Virus record (IMG/VR): IMGVR_UViG_3300050122_000263
Span: 518,008 to 582,007 of that record
DNA: 64,000 nt
Direction: 5' to 3' (one strand)
Within the stretch, counting starts at the first letter, position 1. The number at the start of each line of letters is the position of its first letter. The notes under the pieces were generated by a model, which ran no database searches, had not been told where the DNA came from, and was given only the letters and a program-made list of their open reading frames with translations. Of this stretch, positions 24,812-63,354 are shown piece after piece. The translations under genes were made by a program, and so were the position numbers.

Positions 24812-24829
24812 AACATCTATCCTCTATGG

Positions 24830-34964: not shown

Positions 34965-35117
34965 TGCAGCTGTTTGCAACTTTCTTACGATCTCTCCACT
35001 ACAATTGGCTGATCAGTTCTCGCTTCTTTCGCTGTTGTCATAGAATTAGCACTATGATTATGACTGATATAAAGTTATATCAGTCAGATTAAAGTCGTAC
35101 TAGAAACAACCTAGATA

Positions 35118-38623: not shown

Positions 38624-40855
38624 CTAAACTGACTCAACCAAAAGCTCCTTGTCGAACTTGCCTAGCTGCAAGTTATTCAGCTTAATCCACTCAATGTCAG
38701 CGACATCTTCGATTGGCACCACCTCTCCACTTGGCAGCCGCTTACCAAGAGCATATGTTATGCCGTTATCTTGGGCTACAATGAAGCCGTGACTTGTCTC
38801 CTCAAATAGCCGTTTAGCTGTATTGAACTTCTTGACGTGTAAGCGAGTGGGTTCTAGGGTGGGTGCTCCAGGCACGAAAGTTCCAGCCGTCGGAGCTGCA
38901 CCACCCTTGTTCTGGGGTGCAATTTCCATGCCCTTTGCATAAGCGAAGGCCAAGTCCTCGGCTTCAAGTGGCACCAACTTACCGTTCTTCCACTTGCCCT
39001 TGACTCGCAGCTGGCCAGCCTTGTCATGCTCAACTACCAGTTGTTGTTGCTCTGTGATGAACAGATCGTCATAGGGCTCGTGATCGCGTATAACCAGGTC
39101 ACGAGCTGGATGCTCGAGTGCCCCATAACTAGGCAGAACTGGCGGCAGATAACGTAATCCATGTATGCGACTCCGTGCCATGTCCTCTGGACGCAGAGAC
39201 AGGATGTCGCCATCTTCTCCCTTATAGCCAATGACTCGCCAGCCAAATCGGCTAACATGGAGAATCAGACCATCTCCCTCTATCTCATAGAGCTGAAGCT
39301 CCAGATTGAAGGGTCGAAGCAATATGTTGTGAATCTCGGTGCCATGAGCACCCAAGGGCACAGTATCGATATCGCGTAGATTACCTTCCTTGATGGTGTT
39401 CAGACAAGAGTGGCAGATATAACAGTCACCCTCGCCCATCAAGCCGATGTAGAAGGCCGGATTGCCACAGTGCTCCTTACCCCTCATGTTTCCGGGGTAA
39501 GTGCAAAGTCGCATCTTGTTGACCTCCCAGCCCACTTTGGCAGCCTCGTTATGTTGCACCACTTTCTTATGCAGTACACAATGATCTAGGCCAGGCATCA
39601 CAGGTTTCTCACAAGGTTGTCCCTTCTTCGATCCTCGCACGATCACGTAAATACAGCCCGTGTTGATGGGGACAGCTCTCTTCAAGCCATTGTGCACAAC
39701 ACAGAAGAGTCTATTGCCTGATGCAAGAGGTTTGGCACAATATTGTCCCTTTCCAACACCTCGCTGGAACATATGCTGACACAAGTTCTTGGGTGGCTCT
39801 GGAACCTCATCTTCCACTTCTACCTCAACTTCCTCCTCGAAGTCTTGCTCTCCCGGTTGAGTTTGCTCAGACGGTGATGGGATGAAACTGGGTGCAAAAC
39901 CACCCATGACAGATGGAAGTGCTGGAACGAAAGAAGGAGTAAAAGCTGGGGTAGCAACAGGGTCAGGTCTAGAAGACGTCTGATTGCTCAGGATAGGCAT
40001 TTGCATGGTGAATCTCGGTTGATCAACAGTAACAGGCTTCTTGACCGGCCTGACCGGTTGCTTGAGCTTGCCTCCGTATACAGTCACATGATGTTTGCCA
40101 CAGTAGCCTAGCCCGTCGGTACGTAGTCTCTCGCAGCGAAGTCCCATACAGGGGCCCTTTGGATATTTGAAGGTACAACGCAATTCTACCGGCACAGGCT
40201 CCGGTAGCGGCTCAGTCAAGAAAGCAGGTAGAACAACGCCGGGTATCTCTGGCATAGATATGTATCTAGCTACGATTGATCTGGCAAACATCACAGCATG
40301 CTGCTCGCGCCAGATCTTGCGATGCTCCACGCAATGTAACGACCCATCTACACGGGGCTCTTTGCAGATTCGACTTCTGGACTCCTTCGGAAAATCATAG
40401 GTGCAGCTCTCCGGGGTATGAGCATCACATCGAACCCTTCCTTGCAATCCTTCCTCACCTGACCAAGTGACTTCACAGAGTCCCTCGGGAGTGCGCGTGC
40501 AGCAACGAGTAGGACACGAGTATTGACGCAGCGGTACGTTGCTCTCAGCTAACAGCTTAGTCACGTACTCGACCCTTTGATCGCGAACCTGCTTCTTGTG
40601 GGGTTTGCAATAGTCTGACTCGAATGCACAGGGCTTATTGCAGGGAAGTTCATTGTCACTGTCGGTGAAGCTGCATCCGATTGGCTCAGTCTCAACCGGG
40701 GCGATGTCAGATACGATCTGGGTGAAAAGCTCTGCCGCATGTTCGGTGCAGGCAAAGTGCTTGCTGCCCTCGATTTGAGAACAACGGTTGTTGCATTGGC
40801 GCCCGGTTGAGAAGCCGCGTTGAAAGATGTACTCACAGAATCCGCTCGTGTTCAT
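38624..40855 (-). CDS. Multi C-C-C-H zinc-finger repeat protein, paralog 1
   Basis: About 7 C.(Y/F)....G...G..C......C..H units; triple C-terminal repeat. Confidence 0.75.
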   Translation of the reverse strand: MNTSGFCEYIFQRGFSTGRQCNNRCSQIEGSKHFACTEHAAELFTQIVSDIAPVETEPIGCSFTDSDNELPCNKPCAFESDYCKPHKKQVRDQRVEYVTKLLAESNVPLRQYSCPTRCCTRTPEGLCEVTWSGEEGLQGRVRCDAHTPESCTYDFPKESRSRICKEPRVDGSLHCVEHRKIWREQHAVMFARSIVARYISMPEIPGVVLPAFLTEPLPEPVPVELRCTFKYPKGPCMGLRCERLRTDGLGYCGKHHVTVYGGKLKQPVRPVKKPVTVDQPRFTMQMPILSNQTSSRPDPVATPAFTPSFVPALPSVMGGFAPSFIPSPSEQTQPGEQDFEEEVEVEVEDEVPEPPKNLCQHMFQRGVGKGQYCAKPLASGNRLFCVVHNGLKRAVPINTGCIYVIVRGSKKGQPCEKPVMPGLDHCVLHKKVVQHNEAAKVGWEVNKMRLCTYPGNMRGKEHCGNPAFYIGLMGEGDCYICHSCLNTIKEGNLRDIDTVPLGAHGTEIHNILLRPFNLELQLYEIEGDGLILHVSRFGWRVIGYKGEDGDILSLRPEDMARSRIHGLRYLPPVLPSYGALEHPARDLVIRDHEPYDDLFITEQQQLVVEHDKAGQLRVKGKWKNGKLVPLEAEDLAFAYAKGMEIAPQNKGGAAPTAGTFVPGAPTLEPTRLHVKKFNTAKRLFEETSHGFIVAQDNGITYALGKRLPSGEVVPIEDVADIEWIKLNNLQLGKFDKELLVESV

Positions 40856-43817: not shown

Positions 43818-43977
43818 GTTTGATTGTTCGTGTTGATTTGGAGACAAACAGCGAGATAATTGAAATTTCACATTCCCCTTGCATCTGTTAAATTCGCCCA
43901 CTTAGATCATAATACAATTGAGTGTGAAGTTGTTTTGTGACAATCTCATAAACTTGAGACCAGGATCACAAGACTAG

Positions 43978-44038: not shown

Positions 44039-45610
44039 TTACGGTCTGGTGTAACCCTCAAAACGGGGAAAGGCCTTAATTTCTTTGACTGAGTAGGCTT
44101 GGGTAATAAAGGCAATCAGTCGCTCCACCCCCAGTCCGAAGCCGGCTGTATCTCCAGCACCGTACTCACGCAGGTCCATGTAGAAGCCATAGTCCCTATC
44201 AATGTCCGCGATGGAATGCATCTTAGCCACGAAGTCCAGGAAAAGTTGCTGTGTAGTACGGGGTGTATAAGCAGCCTTATAACCGTCCTTGAGGAAGGAT
44301 GCGAAATCTCCGGCATGGGCACAGAAGACGAAGAGCGCATCTCTGAGAAACTCGGTTTCCTCCTTCTCGATCAAGATCATAATGCGCTTCTTCAACTCAG
44401 AATCCAGTTGAAAGTCAGTGGGATGGGCCTTCTTGTCAATCACATCAAACAAGAGCTCCGCTGCGTCTCTGAGGATTTGACCCTCTAGTGCGCGGCGTAG
44501 TTCAACTGGATCAGAGACACGAGGACCTGAGCCCACGACCTCTCCAACTTTTGGCAATTCCACGTCAACTCCCAGCACACGAGAACGGTCTTCTGGGTCA
44601 CGGCGCATGTAGAAAGATTTGAACTCAAATGGGAACTTGCAGAGAAAGACGATTTGATCGAGCTTGTCGATGAGCTGACGTTCCTGGGCTTCTGGAATAT
44701 CATCACGTTCTCCGAAGGGCGTTCCATCTGTCTTGCTGATACCCATCTCTCCCAACTTAACAACAGCTTCCTTATGGGGCAGGATGAGAATACCTTTGCG
44801 ACGCAGCGCCGCGATATGATCCACTTTCTGGATATCAGCACAGGTCTCGATGATGCGATCAAACAGAATCTCCACGAACTGAGTCAGAAAGGTGATGTAT
44901 GATTCGAAGGTGGGGAAGCCAGGTCCCTCAAACTCTGCGTGATCAAAGGAGCTTAAATGGCGGCGTGTTTTGGAACGCTCAGCCCTGAAAGAGGGGGCAA
45001 TACAATAGCAACGCCCCACCGCCGGCACGGCAGCTTCCAGGTAGAACTGTGAGCTCTGAGTCAGATAGACTTGATCGCCCATATGATCAAAGGAGAAGAC
45101 AGAGGAGCCTCCTTCGCAAAGGGTCGAGCCATAGAGAGGAGGTGAGATCTCAGTGCAACCCAGCTTCTCAAAGGTAAAGCGCAGGGCTGAGAGAACACGA
45201 GCATAAAGCACGATGTGTCGTCTAGGCTCCTTGTGTCTGATCCAGAGAGCTCGCTCCTTCAGTTGAATGTCAATGCCCGATTCCTTTGAGACTCGGCTCC
45301 TGAAGTCATGGCGTGCAAGATTACAAGTCTTAATTTCTAAGCACTCCAGCTCGAAGCCTGTGGCTGTGGTGTGTGATGCTTCAACTCGTTTGACTCGGGC
45401 GCTCATAGCCAGATAGGTTTCAGGTGTGATGTCACCGTGTTCACTTGCGATCTTCACGTCGATGACCACCTGGATCTGATCCTGTGGCAGTGGCCCATCA
45501 CGTAGTGTGACGAAGATGAAGCGCTTCTTGTGGACAAGTCTGGTCGTCCATCCCTGAACGAAAATTGTAGTGTCAAGTTTGGTCTCGTCGATATCCTTCA
45601 ATGCGAGCAT
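44039..45610 (-). CDS. asnS: Asparaginyl-tRNA synthetase (class IIb, eukaryote-like)
   Basis: OB-fold with FVTLRDG; CEGGS; YLTQSSQFYLE; motif 2 SFRAERSKTRRHL; motif 3 GFGLGVER. Confidence 0.88.
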   Translation of the reverse strand: MLALKDIDETKLDTTIFVQGWTTRLVHKKRFIFVTLRDGPLPQDQIQVVIDVKIASEHGDITPETYLAMSARVKRVEASHTTATGFELECLEIKTCNLARHDFRSRVSKESGIDIQLKERALWIRHKEPRRHIVLYARVLSALRFTFEKLGCTEISPPLYGSTLCEGGSSVFSFDHMGDQVYLTQSSQFYLEAAVPAVGRCYCIAPSFRAERSKTRRHLSSFDHAEFEGPGFPTFESYITFLTQFVEILFDRIIETCADIQKVDHIAALRRKGILILPHKEAVVKLGEMGISKTDGTPFGERDDIPEAQERQLIDKLDQIVFLCKFPFEFKSFYMRRDPEDRSRVLGVDVELPKVGEVVGSGPRVSDPVELRRALEGQILRDAAELLFDVIDKKAHPTDFQLDSELKKRIMILIEKEETEFLRDALFVFCAHAGDFASFLKDGYKAAYTPRTTQQLFLDFVAKMHSIADIDRDYGFYMDLREYGAGDTAGFGLGVERLIAFITQAYSVKEIKAFPRFEGYTRP

Positions 45611-46604: not shown

Positions 46605-46630
46605 AAAAAACATCTATATAGATGTTTTTT
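46605..46630. terminator. Perfect 26-bp palindrome between convergent genes
   Basis: aaaaaacatctat/atagatgtttttt. Confidence 0.75.
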
Positions 46631-46703: not shown

Positions 46704-47546
46704 CTACTTAGTCTGCAACAACGTGCGGAGTTGCTCATAATTCATGCCAAGCTGGTAAGGATAGTAGTTAGCTCCAAGCATAACGCAAGCTTTCTCTTGA
46801 GTCAGTCTGAAAAGGACTTCCAGCACCAAGCGGGCAAAATCATCGATGTCTTGTTCCACTGTGCTTTCGGTTTGTCCTATAGGTACTCCCTCATGAAAGA
46901 CATCAAGCGGAATCACTGTGATTTTCTTACTCTTGCCTCTGGCACGGCCCTTCGGTACAGATACAGCAGTACAAGCATCGGCGAAATCGATGATATGAGC
47001 CGTTTCAGCTGCATCAATGATGATGTTCTCAAGACTGAGATCATTGTAGACCACACCACATTGATGCAGCTTCTCGATTTGATTCAAGATTTGCACCAGG
47101 ACAGGGCGGCTCCAGGCTCGGTCATGCTTAAGCTCTGCAGTTGCAATGTATTTACAGCCATCTGTAGCTGGGGAACTATTCTTGGCGTCTCTAGACTCCA
47201 GCCAGCGGTCCAAAGTCTGCCCCTCAATATACTGGAAAATATTCATCTCCAGCAGGTCTGGTATAAATGCCACCTCCTGATCTAGTTTGAGGGCCATAAT
47301 CATCTCTTCGTAGTTAGCAATTGTGGCTTTGACCTTATTCTCACCCACTAGGCTAAGCAATAGGCGTTCTGTATTGATATGTCCTGCAATCAGTGGGTAG
47401 AGTAGAGCATCAGCATTTCTCGACGCTACGGTCTCGATCTTAGCAACGGCTCTCACATCCTGGAAGACTCCTTCCAGGATAATGCGTCCGGTGTCGGACC
47501 AGGGGCACAAGAAGCGAACAAAGGTGAATTGCTGGATACCAGCCAT
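46704..47546 (-). CDS. Protein kinase-like protein
   Basis: AVAKI, FQYIEGQTL, LHQCGVVYNDLSLENII, IIDFA. Confidence 0.75.
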   Translation of the reverse strand: MAGIQQFTFVRFLCPWSDTGRIILEGVFQDVRAVAKIETVASRNADALLYPLIAGHINTERLLLSLVGENKVKATIANYEEMIMALKLDQEVAFIPDLLEMNIFQYIEGQTLDRWLESRDAKNSSPATDGCKYIATAELKHDRAWSRPVLVQILNQIEKLHQCGVVYNDLSLENIIIDAAETAHIIDFADACTAVSVPKGRARGKSKKITVIPLDVFHEGVPIGQTESTVEQDIDDFARLVLEVLFRLTQEKACVMLGANYYPYQLGMNYEQLRTLLQTK

Positions 47547-47835: not shown

Positions 47836-49788
47836 ATGCATAAGGGTTTTCTCATCGACGAGTACTGCACAGCGCAGGGAGGGCAACTCTATGAACACCC
47901 TCAGAATGGGGTTTACTCTTGCACTCTCAATCAAACAGACATCCGCCGTAATGCTAATAAGTTTTATATCATACAAATTGTGCAGAGCGGAAGTAGCTAT
48001 TATCTATATGTTAGGTACGGAAGGGTCGGGGCAAAGGGCGTGACATCACAACAACCATACCACTCAGCGCAGATGGCTGCCAGTGACTTTGAAGGCAAAT
48101 TCCGAGAGAAGACAGGTAACCACTGGTATTCCCGTGAACAATTCCAAGCCAAGCCCAAGAAATATTTCCTGGCTAATATCAATTACGCCCAGGAGATGGC
48201 TGCAGTAGTCTTGCCACCACCTGCGGCTATGATACCATCTCAGCTGCCCAGGCCAGTGCAGGATCTTATAACTATGCTGTCAGATCGCAATATGATGCAA
48301 CAAGCCTTGGTTAATCTGGAGATTGATCTGACTAAGATGCCTCTGGGTAAGATTACTCAGCAACAGCTTGATATGGCTCGAGCTGTGTTGGATCAACTTC
48401 AACACCTTGTAGTACACAGGACGTTTCCAACCGTTGTGAGTGAGGTAGCGAGGCCTTCGTTTGCAGCTCCTGTAGCTGGCCTACAATTCGAGTTGGTGGA
48501 TGATACGCCAGCAGTTCAGAGCCCTGCCCTGCCTGTACCTGCGCCAGTCAGTCCAGTCCCAACTGTCTTACCCCAGGTTCCAGTTCAGACCCCTCCTGTC
48601 AATACGACAGGTTTTAGAGCCATCACCTTTCAGCCTGCTGCGCCTAGATCGACGGTGGCTCGGCCTGCCATGACAGGCCCTGTCTTCCAGCCCAACTCTG
48701 GCTTTACACCGTTGAACTTTCAACCAACGTTAAATGGTTCATTCAGACCAGTTCAGTCGACTTTCCAGCCTATCTTTGCCTCGGCAGCTCATGTGTTAAC
48801 TCCCACTTTCACCCCTGGTCCTATGACCCAACCAGCTGTACAGCTAGTGCTACAGGGCCCGACAACACTGAGCTCAGCTCACAGCACTTCAGGGGTTATT
48901 CCCTTGAGTGAAGGCCATCTAAATATGGAGCTGGTGAATCTCTCCTCCCGCTACTACACCTATGTGCCGGTCAACTGTGGTCGCAACATCCCACCTGTCA
49001 TCAACAATACAGCCATGATTGACAAGTGCCGCCAAGTATTGGATGATCTCAGCAATATCTCAGTTGGAGTCAAAATCATTGATCAGAGCCAAAGATCTAC
49101 CTCGAACCCGATAGACTCTGTCTACCAAGACATCAACACAAAGATTGAGCCTCTAGCCCGCAATTCTCAGATGTGGGCGGCTATCAACACTTATGTCACA
49201 AACAGTCACGGTAGAACACACAGTTGTAAGCTACAGGTGATGGAGATCTTCACCATTGAGCAGGCCGGTAAAAGGGCCAAGTTTGAGGCGTTCTCAAACC
49301 AAATTGGCAATCATACATTACTCTTCCACGGCACTCCCACGTCATGCGGAATCTCAATTATGAAGCGCGACTTCTATCTCAATCCCGAGGTACTTGGGGC
49401 TAGTATAACAGGCAAGATGTTTGGACTGGGATTATACTTTGCAAACTGTTCTTCCAAGAGCTTTGGCTATACTCGTGCAGAAACCACCGGAGGTATTGGT
49501 TGTATGTTCTTAGCCCAAGTGGCCTTGGGTACCTCATTGGACAAACTAGACAGTGATAGTGGTCTTAATAAATCAAAGCTGGATGCAGCAGGTTGTCACT
49601 CCACCAAAGGCATTGGTCGTTTGGCTCCAGCCTCATCTGTTGAAGTGGATGGAGTGAAAATACCACTCGGCGCTATCGCTGAGAATCCTGACGCTAGAGC
49701 ACTCAATTACGATGAGTTCATTATCTATCACGTGGATCAGCAGTTAATTCGCTTCCTGGTGCTGGTCAAAGATCTCAGCTCGCGTTGA
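47836..49788 (+). CDS. PARP: Poly(ADP-ribose) polymerase (WGR, regulatory and catalytic domains; PARP2/3-like layout)
   Basis: LNQTDI..NANKFY.IQ, YGRVG, MPLGK, LLFHGT, GKMFGLGLYFA..SSKS..Y, LNYDEFIIY; ATG at 47836. Confidence 0.92.
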   Translation: MHKGFLIDEYCTAQGGQLYEHPQNGVYSCTLNQTDIRRNANKFYIIQIVQSGSSYYLYVRYGRVGAKGVTSQQPYHSAQMAASDFEGKFREKTGNHWYSREQFQAKPKKYFLANINYAQEMAAVVLPPPAAMIPSQLPRPVQDLITMLSDRNMMQQALVNLEIDLTKMPLGKITQQQLDMARAVLDQLQHLVVHRTFPTVVSEVARPSFAAPVAGLQFELVDDTPAVQSPALPVPAPVSPVPTVLPQVPVQTPPVNTTGFRAITFQPAAPRSTVARPAMTGPVFQPNSGFTPLNFQPTLNGSFRPVQSTFQPIFASAAHVLTPTFTPGPMTQPAVQLVLQGPTTLSSAHSTSGVIPLSEGHLNMELVNLSSRYYTYVPVNCGRNIPPVINNTAMIDKCRQVLDDLSNISVGVKIIDQSQRSTSNPIDSVYQDINTKIEPLARNSQMWAAINTYVTNSHGRTHSCKLQVMEIFTIEQAGKRAKFEAFSNQIGNHTLLFHGTPTSCGISIMKRDFYLNPEVLGASITGKMFGLGLYFANCSSKSFGYTRAETTGGIGCMFLAQVALGTSLDKLDSDSGLNKSKLDAAGCHSTKGIGRLAPASSVEVDGVKIPLGAIAENPDARALNYDEFIIYHVDQQLIRFLVLVKDLSSR

Positions 49789-49875
49789 AAGTTGGACAGT
49801 ACTGAGCTCAGAGAATTAAAAACAGAGTCTTAAGATTGATGTGAGAGTTCTCACATCAAAGTATGTAAAGCCACC

Positions 49876-50598
49876 ATGCAAAACATCACCTTCCAAGTTG
49901 TTGAGGAGGATCAGGCAAGCACAGAAGAAGTAGTCGAAACGCTTGCCGAGCAAGATCTGCCTGATGAGACTCCTGCCAATGAAGCGGATTACTGTATGAT
50001 TTGCTATGAGAAATACGACCTTCCAGTTACCCAACCTTGTTGCCAGAAGAAGTTCTGCTTCCTTTGCTTGAAGGGAGCTTATGACTTCAATAATAACTGT
50101 CCTCACTGCTGTCAAACCAATATCCTCAAGCTGGACCACCTGGTTGAGGATAGTATCGAGCAATTCATTTCAAGCCAACTGGACAAACCTGTTTGGCTTT
50201 ATGCCTCAGCCAGCAAGGATGGTTATTGGTTGTATGGTTCTCGAATTGCTCCTCTACTTGAAACGGCTTTCCAGAAATACATGGCTACTCACCCCACCTC
50301 ATCTTCGGAAGATTCAGGAGAGGACTCTGAAGAAAATCCAGGGGAGAAAGATGACTCTGTTGAGCTGCCAGACCAAGACGCCGTTAATAGTGAGGCAGAA
50401 GTGGAGCCCGCACTTGATTCCATCACGTTTCAGATAACTGGCAAATGGTATCGGGTCAACTTCAAAGAGATGACTCAACGCAATGGCAATCGACATCGGG
50501 CAGTCAGGCGGGTTATCCTGCAACCCAAGCATATCGGAGATGACGGCCTGAATATCAAGGGTGTACAGGGCCTCTTCATCAAAGAGAAGAAGGAATAG
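49876..50598 (+). CDS. RING-WWE E3 ubiquitin ligase, RNF146/Iduna-like
   Basis: CMIC...PVTQPCC..FCFLCLKG...CPHC; WWE-like WLY...GYWLY...LETAF...I.GKWY.VNFKEMTQ...R.VRR; terminal KGVQGL. Confidence 0.8.
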   Translation: MQNITFQVVEEDQASTEEVVETLAEQDLPDETPANEADYCMICYEKYDLPVTQPCCQKKFCFLCLKGAYDFNNNCPHCCQTNILKLDHLVEDSIEQFISSQLDKPVWLYASASKDGYWLYGSRIAPLLETAFQKYMATHPTSSSEDSGEDSEENPGEKDDSVELPDQDAVNSEAEVEPALDSITFQITGKWYRVNFKEMTQRNGNRHRAVRRVILQPKHIGDDGLNIKGVQGLFIKEKKE

Positions 50599-50846
50599 CA
50601 TCATGTAAAAACAGTCCATTATAAACGCAAAATAACTATACCAGTTATTTTCAAACTTATCTCACCACACATTGCATCAGAAAGCTTAATCTTTAACCTG
50701 AAACATAAACAGTTTTCCCTCAATTCACTGAAGTAATAATGGGAGAGATACAAAAAATCGATTATCCGTGTGAAAACGGATAATTGTAATATCCAGCAAC
50801 TTTGTGCTTTGTAAAGGGTCAGAGCTCAACTACCAACGTATAGCTA

Positions 50847-53507
50847 ATGGAAGAGCCAGCCCTGCCAGATTTTAAGTTGATCTTGCCCTACTTTGAGTTA
50901 ATCCTACCGGGCAAAGCAGCCTCTCAGGCTAAGGTACTTAAGGCTCAGATCGACTTCGTGCAACGTGGTGGTAAGAAACTTTTCAGTTTCACCATTCTAC
51001 CTGCCGATCTGATAGAGGATCTGACCGGAGATTTTGTGGCCCAACAGGCCCTCAGGAACTATCTGATCTATCTGTTTCAGGGTGGAGAAATACCGCCTGA
51101 ACGGGAACGCAGAGCTCTACTGACAGCCTGGCAAATCTCACGCTTGCTGGATTGCAGCGAGGAGATGTGTCAACGGACCGCAAACTTGGCTGAGGCTTAT
51201 CTGCAACATGCCGGAGCTGAAGATCTACCAGCCTTAGAGCTGATCTTACAGGTTCTGTCTTTTGCACCAACATTGGTGGCTCGCTTCCTCAAGGACATGG
51301 CCAATCGAATCTACGAGACAGATAGTTTCACCAACCAGCTGGCCCATTACTTCCGCGAGATCATTCAACATAACGAGCAAATGGCTTACGCTCTCCAGCC
51401 ACATGCTTATCCCACCGTGCACGCGGAACGAATTGATCGAATTAGCCCCACTTTCTTCTTGTTAGATCCCCTCCGCTCTTCTGCCCTAATACCTGACTAT
51501 ATGGACGCTCAACCAGTGGCTGCTATTCCAGAAGGAAGTTTCATCGTTGCCCCAACAGCGGTCAAGCTACCAGATATTCAACTCTTTTTGCAACGTGCAG
51601 TCCAGATCTTCCCAGATTTACTACAGTTTAATGAGGAAATCAGTGCTCAGATTCGCCAACAATTTCCAGGTCAAAATGTGGGCTTCTTGATCGCAGATAT
51701 GATCATGCCGATTTGTCTGGATGAGTGGTTATTTCAGCGCTTCAGTGACAAAGCCAATATCGAAATTCACGCTTACGGTCCCACCATTGAAATCAGGGAG
51801 AAGATATTCACTCTGATTAATACATGGTTTCGAGTTAAGTTCGGTTTTGCAGGGCGACGATTTGATGTGGAACCTGAATATATGATTAGACAGGGAAGAG
51901 CTGGATTAGTCTTCAGTCGTGCGAATCCCAACCTTCCAGCTCTCATCATAAGGATCGTGCCTTCAGGTGCCTCAACTGCTATGCAACAACTCAGTCAACA
52001 ACGTGTCTCTCATCTACAGGTCGGTTATGATATGTATAAGGGGTTAGTTTGTACTCCACTCTTCTCTCTTTACTTCAGGCAGCGAGTCTCAGTCATTGAT
52101 CACTATGCTATTACCTTCGAGGAGCTAGTGACCACCCTTTACTATGGCTTTACTCTGAGTATTATCGCTCCATTCGCTCACCTGCTGGTATATTTAAAGG
52201 CGAATAAGTTCAAACTGACTCACCTTTATTACGAGGTGATGGGAATGCCAGCCCTTATCAAGGGTGCTCCTCAACTTGTTGTGATGAAAACGCCGCCTGT
52301 AGGAACATTGTGGCCTCCCATTATCCAACCCGCTGATGCAACTGTTAATCGCCATGCCAACTGGTTAGCCGGCCAATCTGGCGATTACGCTATTATCGGC
52401 AGCGATGCTATAGTTGTTTCTAAACATCTCGACCGTTGGGACACCATCTCACAGTTCGATGCTCTTGAGAGCATAAGCTTTGACCTGGATATAAATCGTT
52501 TGATCGAACCAGGGGAACCGACAACTATTGAGGGTGTCACTAATACACCTCAAGCTTTCCATTATGATCCTGAGCGCCCTCTCGCAAAGACTCTTCTTGA
52601 GATGAAAGTTGGATCTCTTATGCTCGGTAATTACTCTTTGGGTAGTAGCTTCCTGCTACGTCAGTGCCGTTTCAAGCGTTTGCCACAATATCTCATGCCT
52701 CGAGAGGTACGGGTTATGAATAAGAACTACAAACTCATACATGAATATGTATGGGATGTTGGAGTTACATTACCTGAAAGAACAGTTCCACCCATGCAGA
52801 TAGATACTGTAGCTGCCTGGGGTCCACAAGGACTTGAGCTGCAGCACGATGTTGTGCGATATGAAGGGACTGGCCCAGTTGCTGGGCCGGGCAGAAATCC
52901 GGTCTCCGTCTTTGAGCGGGTCAATATGCCGAACGATCCTACTAATGTCATGTTGCTCAACTCAACGACACTTTTCCCAATCAATGTGGTCGGAGTTCTA
53001 CAGATTCACTCACAGGGTGGTAGAAGGCCTGTTTCTATCTCTGAGATGCGGGACCCGCTTCCTTTGACTGAGGAACAGATTAACGCTCTACCTGTGATTA
53101 AGCTCGATCAGCTCTTTGACTTTTTGCTTGTAGCTGATCCTGAGTTCCACGCTCAAGTGCTTGCCTACAGGGAGGTTAATCAGGGAGGAGCTATTGGGTA
53201 TTGGCAGGCAAGAAATGTTAATGTGATGGGAAAGACATTTCGACATGAACGTGTACCACAAGATATACCCAGACTATATGAAGCGGCTCTGGCTAAATAC
53301 AGACCCATCACTTTACAACAAGCTCTCTATGTACCTCAGTTTGTACGCGTTGATCTCGATGTCACCATTGGTAGCTGGCTCTTCATCGATGAAGGTGACT
53401 GGCTTATGCCCTTCTCAGATCTCTTCAAGTATGAGTTCAACTGCACCATTAAGAGGAGTACAGCCTCAGATTTCCGAATTGGCAGAGGATACAAGATATT
53501 TCCTTAG
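50847..53507 (+). CDS. ~900-aa SKP1/BTB-like plus NTase-like family member 2
   Basis: Colinear similarity to 20714, 53622 and 56409. Confidence 0.75.
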   Translation: MEEPALPDFKLILPYFELILPGKAASQAKVLKAQIDFVQRGGKKLFSFTILPADLIEDLTGDFVAQQALRNYLIYLFQGGEIPPERERRALLTAWQISRLLDCSEEMCQRTANLAEAYLQHAGAEDLPALELILQVLSFAPTLVARFLKDMANRIYETDSFTNQLAHYFREIIQHNEQMAYALQPHAYPTVHAERIDRISPTFFLLDPLRSSALIPDYMDAQPVAAIPEGSFIVAPTAVKLPDIQLFLQRAVQIFPDLLQFNEEISAQIRQQFPGQNVGFLIADMIMPICLDEWLFQRFSDKANIEIHAYGPTIEIREKIFTLINTWFRVKFGFAGRRFDVEPEYMIRQGRAGLVFSRANPNLPALIIRIVPSGASTAMQQLSQQRVSHLQVGYDMYKGLVCTPLFSLYFRQRVSVIDHYAITFEELVTTLYYGFTLSIIAPFAHLLVYLKANKFKLTHLYYEVMGMPALIKGAPQLVVMKTPPVGTLWPPIIQPADATVNRHANWLAGQSGDYAIIGSDAIVVSKHLDRWDTISQFDALESISFDLDINRLIEPGEPTTIEGVTNTPQAFHYDPERPLAKTLLEMKVGSLMLGNYSLGSSFLLRQCRFKRLPQYLMPREVRVMNKNYKLIHEYVWDVGVTLPERTVPPMQIDTVAAWGPQGLELQHDVVRYEGTGPVAGPGRNPVSVFERVNMPNDPTNVMLLNSTTLFPINVVGVLQIHSQGGRRPVSISEMRDPLPLTEEQINALPVIKLDQLFDFLLVADPEFHAQVLAYREVNQGGAIGYWQARNVNVMGKTFRHERVPQDIPRLYEAALAKYRPITLQQALYVPQFVRVDLDVTIGSWLFIDEGDWLMPFSDLFKYEFNCTIKRSTASDFRIGRGYKIFP

Positions 53508-53621: not shown

Positions 53622-56282
53622 ATGCAGGCTCCAGAGCTGCCAGAGTTTAAGTTAATCTTGCCCTACTTCGAGCTGGTGATGCCAGGGGAAGCTGCCATCC
53701 AAGCCAGGGTACTTCAGGCTCACATTAACTTCATTCAACGCGGTGGAGCCCCTAATTATTTCTTCTCCATTCTCCCTGAGGACCTAACAGAGAATTTAGC
53801 TGGAGACTTCGTAGCCCAGCAGGCGCTTAGGAACTACCTAACTTATCTATTTCTGGGCGGTGAACTTCCACTCGAACGAGATAGAAGAGCCCTGCTAGCG
53901 GCCTGGGAGATCTCGCGTTTACTGGATTGCACGGCAGATCTGTGTCTCAGGACAGCGCGCCTGGCAGAAGCATATCTAGAACATGCTGGTGCTGATGATC
54001 TGCCTGCCATAGAGCTGATACTACAGATTCTACCCCACGTATCCACTATTACAGCGCGCTTTTTCAAACGGCTAGCTAACCGCCTGTACGAGACGGACAG
54101 TTTTACCAACCAGTTAGCCCATTACTTCAAGCAGATTATTAATGCTAATGAACAATTTGCTTATGCACTGCAACCACACGGCTACCCAACTGTACGCTCC
54201 GAACGGATCGATCAGTTTAGCCCAGCACTTTATCTGATCGATCCATTACGTTCCTCAACCGCTATCCCTGACTATATGGACGCTCAACCAGCAGCTGCTA
54301 TTCCAGAAGGCAGTTTCACTGTGGCTCCAGGCCCTGTGGTGCTACCTAGCATTAACACTTTCCTGCAGAGAATTACCCAAATATTCCCCATGTTGCTGCA
54401 GTTTAATGAGGAAGTGGGCGCCGAGGTTCGCCGGCAGTTCGATGAACAAACTGCAGGATTTTTGCTAGGAGGCATGCTTATACCAATTTGTCTGGACGAG
54501 TGGTTATTTCAACGCTTCAACCGCACAACAACCATTGAATTTTACATTTACGGTCCAACGGCCGAAATTCGACGAGAAATATTCAACATGGTTTTGGGAT
54601 GGTTTGAGGCAGCCTTTGGTCTTCCTGCGAATGAGCCTGGGGTTGAGCCCCAGTATCACGTTTTCAACCGCATGAACAGTTTAACCATAATACGTGCGAA
54701 TCCTGACCTTCCAGCTCTAGCCATCAGGATTGTCCCTTCAGATGCCCAAACTGCTATGAAACAACTTAAATCACAGCGTTTCTCTCATCTGCAGGTCGGT
54801 TATGATGTGCACAGAGGATTAATTTGTACACCACTTTTTGCACTCTATTTCAGAAAGAGAGTTTCTGTTATCGATTCGTACGCTTTCACCCAAGATGAGC
54901 TGATTCAATGTCTTTACACTGGTTTCACTGTCAAGCTAATTGCTCCATTTGCTCACGTACTGGTTTACATGGTGGAGGGCCAGTCTCACGGTTATGTACT
55001 TATGAGTGAATACATGGAAACACCAGCCTTGATTAAGGGAGATCCTCAACTTGTCATCAAACGAGTTATTCTACGTCAAGCAGGTGTTTTAGTGCCACTA
55101 CTTCTAGCAGATTCACCAGGTAACCGCTTTCTCGGTAATGACATTGCAGGGGAGAAAGGGTTGTACACATTCATCGGTAGTGATAGAAGGGCAAGGGAGA
55201 TTGTTGTAAATCATTGGAACACGAATCTGCAACGTGGAAACCAATCCCGTATCAGCTTTGCTTTGAATTTGGATCAAAACATTAAGCCCGAATCTAGGAC
55301 TACTATTGAAGGCTTAACTAATACACCAACTGGTTTCACTTATTCATTTTTTTCAGGAGGCTCTCTACTTCAGGTTGAGCCCGGTTCCATTACGGGCGAT
55401 AACTCTAAATTAAGCAGCTATTTCTTACTACGTCATTGTCGTTTCCACCGTTCTCCACGCTATCTTATCTCACGCGATGTGGAAAGAACAGTGGAGAACT
55501 ATCGTCGTAAGCTTCTCAATCTCGACGATCTAGGAGAATTTATGACTATCCCTGCTCAAACTGTCCCTTCTATAGAGTTCCTACCAGAACAGGATGCCTT
55601 TGAAGAGGTGCTCCAACCTGTTTTACGTTATCCTGTTGACCCTATTACCGGAGTAGCAGCAGTGCCTGGAGGATTTGGCGCTAATCCGTATGTAGTGCAA
55701 CCTACAGACCCGACTAATGTTATGTTGCTGGGTGAAGAGGCAGTTTTCCCTATCACTGTGGTGGGAGTACTGCAACTCTGGTCACTCAATGGAAAGGAGT
55801 TCGTGCCCATCTCTCAGATTAGGGACCCACTACCTCTGACTGAGGAACAGATCAACTCACTGTCCACCATCCGGCCTGACCAGATCTATGATCTATTGTT
55901 GGCAGCTGATCCTGAATTCTACGCCCAGGTCTTAGCCTACCGGGAGATCAACCGAGAAGGGGCCATTGATCGCTGGCGTGAGAGGCAACGCCAGCCACAT
56001 ATAGCACATTTTCAGTATCAACCATTCCCTCAGGATGATGTACCAGCCTTCTTTGAGAGAGCCGTTGTCAAGTGGAGGGACATCACCTTCCGACAAGCTC
56101 TCCAGATGCCTCAGTTTGTCCGCGTCCAGCTGGACGTAATCATTGATAAATGGATATTCATTGATGAGGCCAATTGGCTGATGGAGTTTAAGGAACTTTT
56201 CCTACACCAGTTCAACTGCTCTATCAAGAAAGATGAGAGGCTCGAGTTCCGAGTTAAGAGGGGATACAAAGTCTTTCCCTAG
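53622..56282 (+). CDS. ~900-aa family member 3
   Basis: Closest to 50847 (LP.FKLILPYFEL, YETDSFTNQLAHYF). Confidence 0.75.
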   Translation: MQAPELPEFKLILPYFELVMPGEAAIQARVLQAHINFIQRGGAPNYFFSILPEDLTENLAGDFVAQQALRNYLTYLFLGGELPLERDRRALLAAWEISRLLDCTADLCLRTARLAEAYLEHAGADDLPAIELILQILPHVSTITARFFKRLANRLYETDSFTNQLAHYFKQIINANEQFAYALQPHGYPTVRSERIDQFSPALYLIDPLRSSTAIPDYMDAQPAAAIPEGSFTVAPGPVVLPSINTFLQRITQIFPMLLQFNEEVGAEVRRQFDEQTAGFLLGGMLIPICLDEWLFQRFNRTTTIEFYIYGPTAEIRREIFNMVLGWFEAAFGLPANEPGVEPQYHVFNRMNSLTIIRANPDLPALAIRIVPSDAQTAMKQLKSQRFSHLQVGYDVHRGLICTPLFALYFRKRVSVIDSYAFTQDELIQCLYTGFTVKLIAPFAHVLVYMVEGQSHGYVLMSEYMETPALIKGDPQLVIKRVILRQAGVLVPLLLADSPGNRFLGNDIAGEKGLYTFIGSDRRAREIVVNHWNTNLQRGNQSRISFALNLDQNIKPESRTTIEGLTNTPTGFTYSFFSGGSLLQVEPGSITGDNSKLSSYFLLRHCRFHRSPRYLISRDVERTVENYRRKLLNLDDLGEFMTIPAQTVPSIEFLPEQDAFEEVLQPVLRYPVDPITGVAAVPGGFGANPYVVQPTDPTNVMLLGEEAVFPITVVGVLQLWSLNGKEFVPISQIRDPLPLTEEQINSLSTIRPDQIYDLLLAADPEFYAQVLAYREINREGAIDRWRERQRQPHIAHFQYQPFPQDDVPAFFERAVVKWRDITFRQALQMPQFVRVQLDVIIDKWIFIDEANWLMEFKELFLHQFNCSIKKDERLEFRVKRGYKVFP

Positions 56283-56408: not shown

Positions 56409-59126
56409 ATGGCTGAAAATCAGCGCCAACTGGTGCTGGTGCTTCCATACTTCAATTTTCCCATTCCAATTGAAGCAGCTCGCCAGACCCGCGTCCTGAA
56501 TGCTCAGATCGACTTCAATTTGGCCAGAGGAAATCAGGCCGAGGAAGACTGGAGTTTTAGCATCCGACCAGAGGAGCTATCCGAAGATCTACAAGCGGAC
56601 CCGGTAGCCCAACAAGCTCTGCAAGAATATCTAAGTTTCCTTTTTCTCAACATCCCATTATCAACCACATGGAATGAGAGAGCGTTGATAACCGCTCTAG
56701 ACATAATCAAAGCCTTAGAGTGCCTACAACCAGAGAAACAGATAGCTCAAACCACCTTGTGTGAGCGCTCAATGCAGCTCCTCAGGTTCTACTTTCAGGG
56801 TGAGACAAGCACTCTACCCCGCATCGACGTTATGTTATACTGGTTACAGATAATCCCAATGGAGACACTTCACTTCCTCAGGAAGATGAGCAACCTTCTA
56901 TATGAGACAGACAGCTTCACCCTCTCCATCTTGAATTACTTCAGACAGATCATAGAAGTGAATGAGCAATACGCTTACGCGCTGCAGCCTCATGGTTATC
57001 CAACCGTGCGCTCAGAGCGTATTGACAAATTTGAGCCCAGCTTCTTCCTGCTCGATCCGCTGAGACGCACGAATCCTGAGTTGCCCGACTACATGGGCGC
57101 AGATTATGTAGCTGTCATTCCCACAAATAGTTTCACAGTGGCTCCAGGCCCAGTCGTTATGCCTGATCAAGCTCTCTTCTTGCGTCGTCTATTACAGATC
57201 TTCCCACAGCTGCTCAAGTTCAATGAAGAAATAGGAGCTCTACTGTCACAACAGTATCCTGACCGCTCGGTAGGCTGTGTTCTGACAGGAGCACTGTTTT
57301 CAATTTGTCTAGATGACTGGCTCTTCCAGCACTTCAACAGCAAGACAGTGATTGAACTACATGTCTATGGGCCAACGCCCGCAATCAGGAAGGATGTCTT
57401 TGGGAAGATCCAGTTCTGGTTCTCTGCCAACTTTGGGCGTCAGGACTATAAATTTAGACAGGGGCGCCAAGGATTTGATATTCTACTGTTGAAAGAGAAT
57501 GTACCAGCTTTCGCCCTTAGAATTTTGACGTCTGATGCTAAATCTGCTATGCAGATTTTGAAAGGCCAACAAGTCTCTCATCTTCAGGTAGGTTATGACC
57601 TATATCGTGGTTTGGTTTGTACACCACTCTTCTCCCTCTACTTTAGGCGGAGACTCTCAATTATCGATGATTTTATAATAGAATTCTATAAAGTGGTAAC
57701 TGCAGTTTTCTATGGCTTTGGGTTGCAGATCATCGCACCATTTGCTTATCTGAGTCGTTACACTTTCTATGCGGTCGGATATACGCGTAGGGAACAGGTC
57801 GGATATACGCATGACGAAGCAAGTGGTTACTCCTTTGAAGATATACGAGACCAGGTACTTGTAAAGGGACGACCTAAATTCATCACACGTATACCAGGCG
57901 CCGCAGGGGTACCACAGATTCTATCAGCCGATACAATCGGACCCCGTTACAATCCTCACACAGAGATTCTGGGAGAAAGTGGCGGTTATCAGGTTATTGG
58001 TGATGATAATCGTGTAGACAGTTTAATTCTAGAACGCTGGGATACACCGGCCAGAGCTGCAGGCTGGTCAGACGAAACGATAGATTTTTCATTATCTCCA
58101 GAGTTGAAGGTGCCGCCCCATCTTACAACTATAGAAGGTCTTGGTGATTTACCAAGAGGATTCTACGGCACCCACGAACTCAGAACTTCATTTGTTGATG
58201 CTGGTGTTATGCAAAGTAACTTCGGGCTTGCAAGCCTATTCCTACTGCGTCAGTGTCGCTTTCAATTCTCAGAAAGTTATAGCTTCCCCAATGGCATTAC
58301 AATTAGGACAAGGAACGGACGTAATCGTTTAGCGAAACCGCCCGCTGGATACCTATCTACTGTGAGTACCATACCTACAAATCGTTTCCCATCAGAACAG
58401 GACTTAGCAACAGAGACTAATTTAGTGAAAGAGGTGGTACGTTACCCAAACTTACCAGCTCAACAAGAAAATCCGCCGGAAGATCAGCCAGAGCAAATTT
58501 TGTACTCACTACCTGCCCCATTACCCCTGGAGCATCCAGAGTTACTCCGTTCACCTTACAATTACTACCCAATTACTGTGACTGGAGTGCTCCAACTTAG
58601 GACAGATAATCGTATACGCCCCATCTTAATAGGGGAGATGAGAGATCCGATCGACTTAAGTGATGAGGAGATTCAAGCTCTACCTCTTGTTCAGGCCGAG
58701 CAACTATATGACTTATTGCTAGCGGCAGATCCATTCTTTAACGCACAGGTTATGGCCTACCGAGAGGTCAACTCTGATAATCGAGCAATGGAACGCGCTG
58801 CCGAGGCAGGAATGGGACTGGGTGGTGCCAATGTGCCCACTCGAGGAGAAATGGAACGGATAAGAGGAACTTATGATAGGGCGGTTATCAAATATTCGAA
58901 ACAAACTCCACAGCTGGCAGCTCAGTTGCCCAAATACGTGCGGGTTCAATTGAATGTGCTAATTACGCGTTGGCTCTTCATTGATGAGGGCCAATGGATC
59001 ATGCCTCCTGAAGATATCCTCAAGTATGAGTTCAACTGTGCTCTCAGGAAAAATTCAGAAAACATCATCACCAAGAAGGCTGGGGCTCAGATTGAACTTC
59101 TGCGTTGTTATAAGATCTTCCCTTAA
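56409..59126 (+). CDS. ~900-aa family member 4
   Basis: YAYALQPHGYPTVRSERID, ICLDDWLFQ, SHLQVGYD, WLFIDEG, YKIFP. Confidence 0.75.
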   Translation: MAENQRQLVLVLPYFNFPIPIEAARQTRVLNAQIDFNLARGNQAEEDWSFSIRPEELSEDLQADPVAQQALQEYLSFLFLNIPLSTTWNERALITALDIIKALECLQPEKQIAQTTLCERSMQLLRFYFQGETSTLPRIDVMLYWLQIIPMETLHFLRKMSNLLYETDSFTLSILNYFRQIIEVNEQYAYALQPHGYPTVRSERIDKFEPSFFLLDPLRRTNPELPDYMGADYVAVIPTNSFTVAPGPVVMPDQALFLRRLLQIFPQLLKFNEEIGALLSQQYPDRSVGCVLTGALFSICLDDWLFQHFNSKTVIELHVYGPTPAIRKDVFGKIQFWFSANFGRQDYKFRQGRQGFDILLLKENVPAFALRILTSDAKSAMQILKGQQVSHLQVGYDLYRGLVCTPLFSLYFRRRLSIIDDFIIEFYKVVTAVFYGFGLQIIAPFAYLSRYTFYAVGYTRREQVGYTHDEASGYSFEDIRDQVLVKGRPKFITRIPGAAGVPQILSADTIGPRYNPHTEILGESGGYQVIGDDNRVDSLILERWDTPARAAGWSDETIDFSLSPELKVPPHLTTIEGLGDLPRGFYGTHELRTSFVDAGVMQSNFGLASLFLLRQCRFQFSESYSFPNGITIRTRNGRNRLAKPPAGYLSTVSTIPTNRFPSEQDLATETNLVKEVVRYPNLPAQQENPPEDQPEQILYSLPAPLPLEHPELLRSPYNYYPITVTGVLQLRTDNRIRPILIGEMRDPIDLSDEEIQALPLVQAEQLYDLLLAADPFFNAQVMAYREVNSDNRAMERAAEAGMGLGGANVPTRGEMERIRGTYDRAVIKYSKQTPQLAAQLPKYVRVQLNVLITRWLFIDEGQWIMPPEDILKYEFNCALRKNSENIITKKAGAQIELLRCYKIFP

Positions 59127-59321: not shown

Positions 59322-63354
<4,033 letters not shown>

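What the first reader, a model, noticed from the sequence alone, without database searches (positions are those of the whole stretch)
49876..50598. RNF146/Iduna-like E3 with an altered RING ligand set and an acidic insert in the WWE
The sequence follows RNF146 as I recall it (FCYLCVKG vs FCFLCLKG; KGVAGL vs KGVQGL after the WWE). The C3HC4 His is absent (PCCQKKFC), suggesting a Cys-substituted RING. A ~45-aa Ser/Glu/Asp-rich loop splits the WWE. Inference: the polyanionic insert could mimic PAR and tune or bypass allosteric activation.
Basis: partly seen in the sequence, partly recalled or inferred. Interest (0 to 1): 0.65.

Follow-up and report, generated by a model that had tools for sequence, protein, structure and literature searches.

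The report
Giant-virus RNF146-like PAR reader beside PARP
A giant virus from peat encodes a small RNF146-type RING-WWE protein next to its own poly(ADP-ribose) polymerase; this gene pair recurs in at least seven divergent giant-virus lineages, and this copy alone has lost two key RING residues.

Summary
Window 49876..50598 (+) is an intact 240-aa ORF with an N-terminal RING and a C-terminal WWE domain. Its best solved relative by sequence and by fold is RNF146 (4QPL: phmmer E 7e-7; Foldseek E 1e-8, TM 0.82).

- **RING:** the zinc-ligand His is missing. The column that is His in 140 of 147 relatives is Lys58 here, which is unique. The linchpin Arg after the last Cys (125 of 147) is Cys79, and an extra Cys55 sits in an inserted column.
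- **Insert:** a roughly 43-aa acidic, Ser-rich, low-confidence loop splits the WWE. About a quarter of relatives, including a Drosophila one, carry a similar loop at the same site, so it is a family trait.
- **WWE pocket:** the PAR-contact residues are kept, apart from a shifted Arg110 equivalent.

The gene directly upstream is a WGR-type PARP with an intact H-Y-E triad. PARP and RING-WWE genes are neighbours in seven divergent giant-virus lineages.

The likeliest reading is a viral PAR writer plus PAR reader/ubiquitin-ligase pair. Whether this altered RING still acts as a ligase is open. The PAR-mimic idea for the insert is untested.

The parts
49876..50598 (+). RING-WWE ORF, 240 aa (P0001), RNF146 family
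   Evidence: ORF. Pfam WWE E 3.4e-9. PDB phmmer best hit RNF146 4qpl, E 7e-7. 231 relatives at E<=1e-3, the nearest at 33% identity. Foldseek to 4qpl_A E 1e-8, TM 0.82.
49876..49989 (+). N-terminal acidic tail, aa 1-38, modelled with low confidence
   Evidence: Block mean pLDDT 46-73 over aa 1-40. The composition is read from the translation.
49990..50121 (+). RING finger, aa 39-82, with the family motif FC[YF]LC[ILV]K (Lys66)
   Evidence: Pfam RING scores are 13-19 bits, below the cut-offs, while relatives score 30-40 bits. pLDDT 91-94.
50038..50058 (+). Altered zinc site 2, first half: Cys55-Cys56-Gln57-Lys58-Lys59-Phe60-Cys61. Lys58 stands in the His column and Cys55 is an extra residue.
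   Evidence: Column counts: H in 140 of 147, K only here. Cys55 lies in a column that is a gap in 129 of 147 relatives. Codons read.
50098..50112 (+). Zinc site 2, second half: Cys75-Pro76-His77-Cys78-Cys79. Cys79 replaces the linchpin Arg.
   Evidence: The column after the last Cys is R in 125 of 147 relatives and C only here. All 6 sequences without the His also lack this Arg (Fisher p 6e-6, not corrected for relatedness).
50185..50289 (+). WWE, first half (aa 104-138): strands with Trp107, Tyr109 and Trp118, then helix 124-138 with Glu129
   Evidence: Alignment to RNF146, column counts, secondary structure.
50290..50418 (+). Acidic Ser/Glu/Asp-rich insert, aa 139-181, probably disordered
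   Evidence: Block mean pLDDT 56-71 over aa 141-180. Composition. Loop length 62 against a family median of 23, and 34 of 141 relatives have 40 or more.
50419..50574 (+). WWE, second half (aa 182-233): Tyr192, Gln201, Arg208, Arg212, Lys228, Gly229, Gly232
   Evidence: Pfam WWE match over aa 182-212. Near-invariant columns. Strands at 182-230.
47836..49788 (+). Viral PARP (WGR, regulatory/helical and catalytic domains) with an H-Y-E triad; the presumed PAR writer for the RING-WWE protein
   Evidence: Pfam PARP E 4e-39, PARP_reg E 8e-31, WGR E 9e-22. It is the only PARP in the 582-kb record. The triad and the ATG 47836 start fit five viral homologues.
49836..49859 (.). Perfect 11-bp-stem hairpin between the PARP stop and the RING-WWE start; probably the 3'-end signal of the PARP transcript
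   Evidence: Hairpins of this kind follow 27 of 41 ORFs in the window.
50629..50651 (.). 9-bp-stem hairpin 31 nt after the RING-WWE stop; probably its 3'-end signal

Best explanation
The ORF encodes a giant-virus member of the RNF146 (RING-WWE) family.

Proposed mechanism:
1. The WGR-type, H-Y-E PARP makes poly(ADP-ribose) on itself and on host or viral proteins.
2. The WWE pocket, together with RING Lys66, binds the iso-ADP-ribose unit of that polymer.
3. The RING then recruits a host E2 to ubiquitinate the PARylated proteins (PAR-dependent ubiquitination).

In this lineage the second zinc site has lost its His (Lys58) and the linchpin Arg is Cys79. I expect Cys55 or Cys79 to complete the zinc site and ligase activity to be kept but weakened or retuned. 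The acidic insert is a disordered surface loop of a kind common in the family.

Shown: the domain architecture, the fold, which residues are conserved and which are lost, and the gene neighbourhood. Inferred: PAR binding, E2 use, the substrates, and the zinc ligands.
For: - **Family and fold:**
- **PAR-contact residues of RNF146** (named in PMC10877565 and PMC11269756) are kept: Tyr109 (Tyr107), Trp118 (Trp114), Tyr192 (Tyr144), Gln201 (Gln153), Arg208 (Arg163) and Lys228 (Lys175). All lie in columns that are at least 70-98% conserved.
- **Lys66:** K in 145 of 147 relatives. It aligns with RNF146 Lys61 at the RING-WWE interface, where iso-ADPr binds (PMC11852910).
- **E2-facing residues:** Ile42 and Pro76 are kept.
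- **PARP:** the H-Y-E triad is present in the neighbouring PARP and in its viral homologues.
- **Synteny:** PARP lies within 1.5 kb of the RING-WWE gene in seven lineages (window/L002, L006/L007, L009, L010, L011, L012, L023). Their RING-WWE proteins are only 22-37% identical, and gene orientation differs between them.
- **Single copy:** the 582-kb record has exactly one PARP and one WWE gene.
- **Intact gene:** the ORF shows no difference in the contigs of four peat runs that lie on it.
Against: - Two RING positions that are nearly invariant in the family and matter for ligase function are changed, the zinc-ligand His and the linchpin Arg. Pfam RING scores fall below their cut-offs.
- All six family members without the His also lack the linchpin Arg. 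This pattern looks like relaxed constraint on catalysis.
- The Arg110-equivalent column is Ala112, and only Lys114, two residues on, could replace it.
- No E2, ubiquitin, PARG or macrodomain gene was found in the record, so every downstream step depends on an unknown host.
- There is no expression evidence: no RNA run holds the stretch.
- Three lineages (L008/L022, L021, L013) show no PARP within the available flanks.
Confidence: 0.5

Rival explanations
1. Ligase-dead PAR reader. The WWE still binds PAR, but the RING no longer activates E2~ubiquitin. The protein would then act as a shield, decoy or scaffold. It could, for example, protect PARylated viral PARP or its targets from host RNF146-type ligases, or gather PARylated proteins.
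For: - Loss of the His ligand and of the linchpin Arg, both unique or rare in the family.
- The two losses go together in all 6 sequences without the His.
- The RING scores below the Pfam cut-offs, whereas relatives pass them.
- The WWE invariants are fully kept.
Against: - All seven remaining Cys ligands, the FCFLCLK motif, Ile42 and Pro76 are kept. The RING is modelled with pLDDT above 90.
- Spare Cys55 and Cys79 sit right beside site-2 ligands.
- From general knowledge, some active RINGs lack a linchpin Arg.
Confidence: 0.3
2. One reading: the polyanionic insert folds back into the basic PAR pocket as a PAR mimic, either autoinhibiting the protein or pre-activating it without PAR. This is compatible with either reading above.
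For: - The insert is strongly acidic (16 Asp+Glu against 1 Lys+Arg) and has four Ser/Thr-x-x-Asp/Glu sites that phosphorylation would make more anionic.
- Acidic, often Ser-rich loops recur at the same site in about 24% of relatives. That could reflect selection for charge.
Against: - There is no sequence conservation within the loops; only the composition is shared.
- Most family members, including mammalian RNF146, lack such a loop.
- Confidence in the model there is low and I could inspect no contact.
- Nothing here tests it.
Confidence: 0.15
3. The gene is a decaying copy with no function, and its RING changes are the first steps of loss.
For: Two hits at conserved RING positions. One related lineage (L008) carries a copy truncated to 115 aa.
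Against: - The frame is fully open, and every WWE invariant plus seven RING Cys are kept.
- The fold is confidently predicted.
- The sequence is identical wherever the contigs of four runs cover it.
- It has its own 3' hairpin like other genes.
Confidence: 0.05

Closest known systems
RNF146 / Iduna (animal PAR-dependent E3; structures 4QPL and 3V3L)
   Same: - N-terminal RING followed by a WWE, with the same relative arrangement of the two domains in the model (TM 0.82 to 4QPL).
- FC[YF]LC[ILV]KG motif with the Lys equivalent to Lys61.
- Tyr, Trp, Gln, Arg and Lys contacts for iso-ADP-ribose, and the KG-x-x-GL ending.
   Different: - Only about 22% identity over the structural alignment.
- The zinc-ligand His is Lys and the linchpin Arg is Cys.
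- The Arg110 column is Ala.
- A 43-aa acidic loop in the WWE.
- No C-terminal region, so none of the tankyrase-binding motifs described for RNF146 (PMC11852910).
- It is virus-encoded, and its neighbour is a WGR-type PARP rather than a tankyrase.
Short RING-WWE proteins of other giant viruses and of metagenomes (P0002-P0150; loci L006-L013, L021-L023)
   Same: - Same size class (150-300 aa) and the same two domains.
- Many carry an acidic loop at the same site.
- Six other viral lineages have a PARP next door.
   Different: - Nearly all of them keep C-x-H-x2-C and the Arg after the last Cys.
- The nearest is only 33% identical.
- Gene order and orientation relative to PARP differ: divergent in L007, L009 and L012; RING first in L011 and L023; PARP first here.
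C4C4-type RINGs such as CNOT4 (from general knowledge)
   Same: A Cys takes the place of the His as the fourth ligand, which shows that a His-less RING can fold and be active.
   Different: The spacing is different: C-x-C-x4-C there, C-C-x4-C here. There is no sequence relationship, and it was not tested here.
PARPs reported in dsDNA viruses (Invertebrate iridescent virus 6, AgMNPV, two phages; PMC4245714)
   Same: A virus-encoded PARP with a conserved catalytic triad.
   Different: That survey reports no partnered PAR-reading ubiquitin ligase. The pairing seen here did not turn up in the literature searches I ran.

Membership tests
RNF146-type RING-WWE E3 ligases | N-terminal RING followed directly by a WWE domain, in the RNF146 arrangement | tested here: met
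   Pfam WWE E 3.4e-9. phmmer to 4qpl E 7e-7 across the RING and the first half of the WWE. Foldseek to 4qpl_A E 1e-8, TM 0.82 over both domains.
RNF146-type RING-WWE E3 ligases | Full C3HC4 set of zinc ligands (C-x2-C ... C-x-H-x2-C-x2-C ... C-x2-C) | tested here: not met
   Seven Cys are present. The His column holds Lys58 (H in 140 of 147 relatives), and there is one extra residue, Cys55.
RNF146-type RING-WWE E3 ligases | Signature FC[YF]LC[ILV]K with the Lys that faces the WWE and ligand (RNF146 Lys61) | tested here: met
   The motif is FCFLCLK, with Lys66. The column is K in 145 of 147 relatives.
RNF146-type RING-WWE E3 ligases | Linchpin Arg right after the last zinc-binding Cys, which activates E2~ubiquitin | tested here: not met
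   Cys79, where 125 of 147 relatives have Arg. The role of the linchpin is from general knowledge of RING ligases.
RNF146-type RING-WWE E3 ligases | iso-ADP-ribose contact residues Tyr107, Trp114, Tyr144, Gln153, Arg163 and Lys175 | tested here: met
   Tyr109, Trp118, Tyr192, Gln201, Arg208 and Lys228. The residue roles come from PMC10877565 and PMC11269756, and from my own recall for Trp114 and Tyr144.
RNF146-type RING-WWE E3 ligases | Arg110, which binds the distal phosphate | tested here: inconclusive
   The aligned column (R or K in 108 of 147) holds Ala112. Lys114 lies two residues on, in a loop one residue longer, and the pairwise alignment puts Lys114 opposite Arg110.
RNF146-type RING-WWE E3 ligases | PAR-stimulated ubiquitin ligase activity | not testable with these tools
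   This needs protein, E1, E2, ubiquitin and PAR or iso-ADP-ribose.
Animal RNF146 orthologues (tankyrase-coupled) | C-terminal region with tankyrase-binding motifs | tested here: not met
   The protein ends 7 residues after the WWE. The motifs are described in PMC11852910. The partner PARP here is WGR-type.
Nucleocytoviricota (giant virus) gene | Lies in a genome with giant-virus hallmark genes and dense intronless coding | tested here: met
   NCLDV capsid, whose nearest atlas clusters are 100% viral Nucleocytoviricota. A 1305-aa B-family polymerase frame. Uniform 44-53% GC over 582 kb. 47 ORFs of at least 150 aa in 64 kb.
PARP1/2/3-type poly(ADP-ribose) polymerases (the neighbouring gene) | WGR, helical and catalytic domains with the H-Y-E triad | tested here: met
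   Pfam. The motifs LLFHG, GLYFA and YDEF align with five viral PARPs. Polymer synthesis itself was not tested.

The most novel reading that the evidence does not exclude
Giant viruses carry a self-contained PAR-dependent ubiquitination module: a DNA-break-type PARP that marks proteins and a dedicated RNF146-like reader/ligase that sends the marked proteins to the host proteasome. It would be kept as a gene pair across deeply divergent lineages.
Probability: 0.4. Interest if true: 0.75.

Novelty: new variant of a known kind. Interest (0 to 1): 0.55.

Why it matters
PAR-dependent ubiquitination is known as a cellular pathway, chiefly tankyrase with RNF146. A virus-encoded writer and reader/ligase pair, conserved as neighbours in several giant-virus lineages, would mean these viruses bring their own system for tagging and removing proteins. 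That gives a concrete and testable handle on how giant viruses reshape host chromatin, DNA-damage signalling or their own replication factories.

The small viral proteins (150-240 aa) are also minimal natural versions of the RNF146 switch. The peat-virus copy is a natural mutant at the zinc-site His and the linchpin. Comparing it with canonical viral relatives could show which parts of the switch are needed for PAR sensing and which for catalysis.

The recurrent acidic loop is a family-level feature that has not been explained.

Tried and rejected
- **Word-index protein search:** found only the query itself. The exhaustive HMMER search was needed.
- **IMG/VR scans:** two scans of viral contigs with alignments gave few loci. 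L020 proved to be a RING protein without a WWE and was dropped.
- **Other pathway genes:** no E2, PARG, macrodomain or ubiquitin gene in the 582-kb record. The record is rated 61% complete, and for E2 and PARG the control genomes were silent too, so absence is weak evidence.
- **Promoter search:** no 8-mer occurred in at least 25 upstream regions. I dropped the question of promoter class or timing.
- **Sequencing runs:** only peat DNA runs hold the stretch and no RNA run does. The contigs show no difference from the window, so no test of selection within the population was possible.
- **Zinc geometry:** I could not read model coordinates, so I could not check whether Cys55 or Cys79 points at the zinc site.
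- **Primary paper:** the RNF146 activation paper (PMC4289021) is not held. The roles of Lys61 and Trp65 rest on my recall plus the review PMC11852910.
- **Phylogeny:** I built no tree of viral against cellular RING-WWE proteins, because almost all relatives are unlabelled metagenome proteins.
- **Cellular origin:** I considered and rejected a compact eukaryotic gene or host DNA around a provirus. The reasons are uniform GC, hallmark viral genes and 3' hairpins.

Full report
**1. What is at the coordinates.**
Window 49876..50598 (+) is one open frame of 240 codons from ATG to TAG. Pfam finds a WWE domain (E 3.4e-9), but only its C-terminal half (aa 182-212). RING models match aa 39-78 weakly, at 13-19 bits, below their cut-offs.

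Against all PDB sequences the best hit is the RNF146 RING-WWE construct 4qpl (E 7.3e-7). It aligns over aa 39-135, with FCFLCLKG opposite FCYLCVKG. A second weak stretch covers the back half of the WWE.

**2. Relatives.**
The word-index search found only the protein itself. The exhaustive HMMER search of 1.8 billion representatives found 231 proteins at E<=1e-3. The nearest is 33% identical (E 8e-20). Almost all are short (150-300 aa) RING-WWE proteins from metagenomes. A barnacle protein named rnf146-like and a Drosophila protein are among them.

A 148-sequence alignment gives the family consensus. It has C-x2-C, LP-x2-LPC-x-H-x-FC[YF]LC-x-KG and CP-x-CR in the RING. In the WWE it has W-x-Y, GWW-x-YD, IE, Y-x-IDF-x-x-M-x-Q, R-x-IKR and KG-x-AG.

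**3. Fold.**
AlphaFold2 with this alignment gives mean pLDDT 80.7. The RING (block means 91-94) and both WWE halves (86-97) are confident. The N-terminal 38 residues and aa 141-180 are poor.

Foldseek against the PDB puts 4qpl_A first, the RNF146 RING-WWE/UbcH5a/iso-ADPr complex. The figures are E 1.1e-8, TM 0.82 by target, rmsd 2.5 and 204 alignment columns for a 153-residue target, so the insert is bridged as a gap. The RNF146 WWE alone (3v3l, TM 0.81) comes next, then the TRIP12 and HUWE1 WWE domains and assorted RINGs.

**4. The RING is really deviant.**
Column counts over 147 relatives:
- The His ligand column is H in 140, D in 5 and N in 1 (a shifted His). Only this protein has K (Lys58).
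- The segment is one residue longer than in relatives. The extra residue is Cys55, in a column that is a gap in 129 of 147.
- The residue after the last Cys is the linchpin position that helps RINGs prime E2~ubiquitin (general knowledge). It is Arg in 125 of 147 and Cys79 here.
- The other seven Cys, Ile42, Pro76, Phe60, Leu63 and Lys66 are all kept.

Relatives' RINGs pass the Pfam cut-offs (30-40 bits) and this one does not. All six sequences without the His also lack the linchpin Arg (Fisher p 6e-6, not corrected for relatedness).

Either Cys55 or Cys79 could serve as a substitute fourth ligand for zinc site 2. I could not inspect coordinates, so 'Cys-substituted RING' remains a hypothesis. 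At least one relative has the same Pro-Cys-Cys together with a normal His (P0092), so Cys55 need not be a ligand.

**5. The WWE pocket is intact.**
I numbered RNF146 from the 4qpl alignment. The offset is 28, and it reproduces Lys61, Trp65, Tyr107, Arg110, Trp114, Tyr144, Gln153 and Arg163.

| RNF146 residue | Residue here |
|---|---|
| Tyr107 | Tyr109 |
| Trp114 | Trp118 |
| Tyr144 | Tyr192 |
| Gln153 | Gln201 |
| Arg163 | Arg208 |
| Lys175 | Lys228 |

PMC10877565 names Arg110, Lys175 and Arg163 as the phosphate binders, and Tyr107 and Gln153 as the adenine contacts. PMC11269756 stresses Tyr107 and the 107-114 loop.

The one doubtful position is Arg110. The family column (R or K in 108 of 147) holds Ala112 here, with Lys114 two residues further on in a loop that is one residue longer.

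Lys66 is K in 145 of 147. It corresponds to RNF146 Lys61 on the RING face that meets the WWE, where iso-ADPr binds and switches the RING on (PMC11852910; the specific residue role is from my recall of the primary paper, which is not held).

**6. The acidic insert is real but not special.**
It spans aa 139-181, between helix 124-138 and strand 182-187. Over aa 136-181 there are 16 Asp+Glu, 1 Lys+Arg, 9 Ser+Thr and four Ser/Thr-x-x-Asp/Glu sites.

The distance between two conserved anchors (Glu129 and Tyr192) is 62 residues here, against a family median of 23. However, 34 of 141 relatives have 40 or more residues there. Most of those loops are acidic and many are Ser-rich, and a Drosophila relative has 134. 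The loops share composition, not sequence.

The PAR-mimic idea is therefore neither supported nor excluded. If it is true, it would be a property of a large part of the family.

**7. Context: a giant virus from peat.**
- The window is the last 64 kb of a 582-kb IMG/VR record.
- GC is an even 44-49% in 20-kb steps, apart from the final 2 kb at 53%.
- The record has an NCLDV major capsid protein (nearest atlas clusters 100% Nucleocytoviricota) and a 1305-aa B-family polymerase frame.
- Genes are dense and intronless.
- A second IMG/VR record of 391 kb has an identical copy.
- Seven peat metagenome runs hold the stretch or part of it, six of them at least half of its sampled words. No listed holder is an RNA run.
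- Contigs from four runs were laid on the stretch and show no difference from the window. The two deepest cover it entirely; both may be the source sample.

**8. The neighbour is a PARP, and the pairing is conserved.**
[quoted passage not shown] It is the only PARP, and the target is the only WWE gene, in the record.

PARP genes lie beside RING-WWE genes in other giant-virus or virus-like contigs as follows:

| Locus | Arrangement |
|---|---|
| L006/L007 | divergent, 19-nt gap |
| L012 | divergent, 20 nt |
| L009 | divergent, 64 nt |
| L010 | 1.5 kb apart, with a PP2C phosphatase gene between |
| L011 | tandem, RING-WWE first |
| L023 | tandem, RING-WWE first, 45 nt |

With the window, that makes seven lineages. 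Their RING-WWE proteins are 22-37% identical and their PARPs 30-62%. Adjacency that survives this much divergence and changes of orientation argues for a functional link.

Three lineages show no PARP in the available DNA: L008/L022, L021 and L013. Two of them have very short flanks.

**9. Mechanism proposed.**
The viral PARP makes PAR. The RING-WWE protein reads its iso-ADP-ribose units. Like RNF146, it then couples this to ubiquitin transfer by a host E2.
- No viral E2, ubiquitin, PARG or macrodomain gene was found (weak evidence, because the record is incomplete).
- The protein has no C-terminal tail, so it lacks the tankyrase-binding motifs of animal RNF146 (PMC11852910).
- Substrate choice would rest on the viral PARP.

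For this particular copy, the altered zinc site and the lost linchpin make ligase activity uncertain. I rate 'active but retuned' at about 0.5 and 'PAR reader without ligase activity' at about 0.3.

**10. Novelty.**
- RNF146 and the RING-WWE architecture are known.
- A survey of PAR systems lists PARPs in four dsDNA viruses and does not mention RNF146 (PMC4245714).
- No held paper combines RNF146 with giant viruses. The only paper holding both 'giant viruses' and 'ADP-ribose polymerase' is a stress-granule review.
- I therefore file the protein as a new variant of a known kind. The conserved viral PARP plus RING-WWE pair is the part most worth following up.
- The library does not cover subscription journals, so prior description cannot be excluded.

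**11. Limits.**
- There is no biochemistry, no expression data and no host.
- There is no coordinate-level view of the zinc site.
- Most relatives are unlabelled metagenome proteins.
- The synteny tally rests on ten loci.

Noticed in passing
whole window; e.g. 49836-49859, 50629-50651, 46605-46630, 24786-24812: Perfect hairpins (stem 8-12 bp, loop 2-7) lie 10-70 nt after the stop of 27 of 41 ORFs. 73 of 134 such hairpins fall in the 8% of the window just downstream of genes. Many read AAAA(C)ATC...GATGTTTT, and convergent gene pairs share one hairpin. This resembles the hairpin rule for transcript 3' ends described for mimiviruses (from my own knowledge).
   Followed up: partly
window about 48420-48990 (inside the PARP gene, 47836-49788): The PARP carries an insert of roughly 190 aa, rich in Pro, Val, Thr and Gln, inside its regulatory (helical) domain. 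None of five other viral PARPs has it, and Pfam splits PARP_reg into two stretches. The helical domain is the autoinhibitory part of PARP1/2 (general knowledge), so its regulation may differ.
   Followed up: no
window 50847-53507, 53622-56282, 56409-59126, 20714-23419: Three tandem paralogues directly downstream of the target, plus a fourth 30 kb away (33-55% identical, about 890 aa), have no Pfam match. tblastn finds eight more matching stretches elsewhere in the 582-kb record. This is a large multigene family of unknown function.
   Followed up: partly
window 38624-40855 and 41289-43901 (-): A second pair of neighbouring paralogues (29% identity, 743 and 870 aa) with no Pfam match.
   Followed up: no
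window 59322-61457 and 61507-63354 (+): Two collagen-triple-helix repeat proteins at the end of the record, where GC rises from about 46% to 53%.
   Followed up: no
window 44039-45610 (-), 33456-34979 (-), 35949-37400 (-), 46704-47546 (-): Cell-like genes nearby: a class II aminoacyl-tRNA synthetase of the Asp/Lys/Asn type, an ERG4/ERG24-family sterol reductase (E 2e-100), an F-box protein, and a weak protein-kinase match.
   Followed up: no
G000 as a whole: IMG/VR labels the record a provirus. Yet GC is even across 582 kb, and the window, which reaches the record's end, is viral-looking throughout. It may simply be a fragment of a free giant-virus genome. CheckV rates it 61% complete.
   Followed up: partly
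L008:10001-10348 and L022:2385-3083: The relative closest to the target over the first WWE half is cut to 115 aa in one assembly (L008) but is 232 aa in a cluster mate (P0151). In this lineage the divergent neighbour is an unknown 473-477-aa protein with no Pfam match, not a PARP.
   Followed up: partly
relatives P0009, P0079, P0110, P0117, P0130: A small subgroup of RING-WWE proteins has Asp in place of the zinc-ligand His (motif C-G-D). Like the target, it lacks the linchpin Arg.
   Followed up: no
L010:3581-4921 (-): In one giant-virus contig a PP2C phosphatase with a SAP-like (Rho_N) domain sits between the PARP and the RING-WWE gene. This may be relevant to the Ser-rich acidic loops.
   Followed up: no
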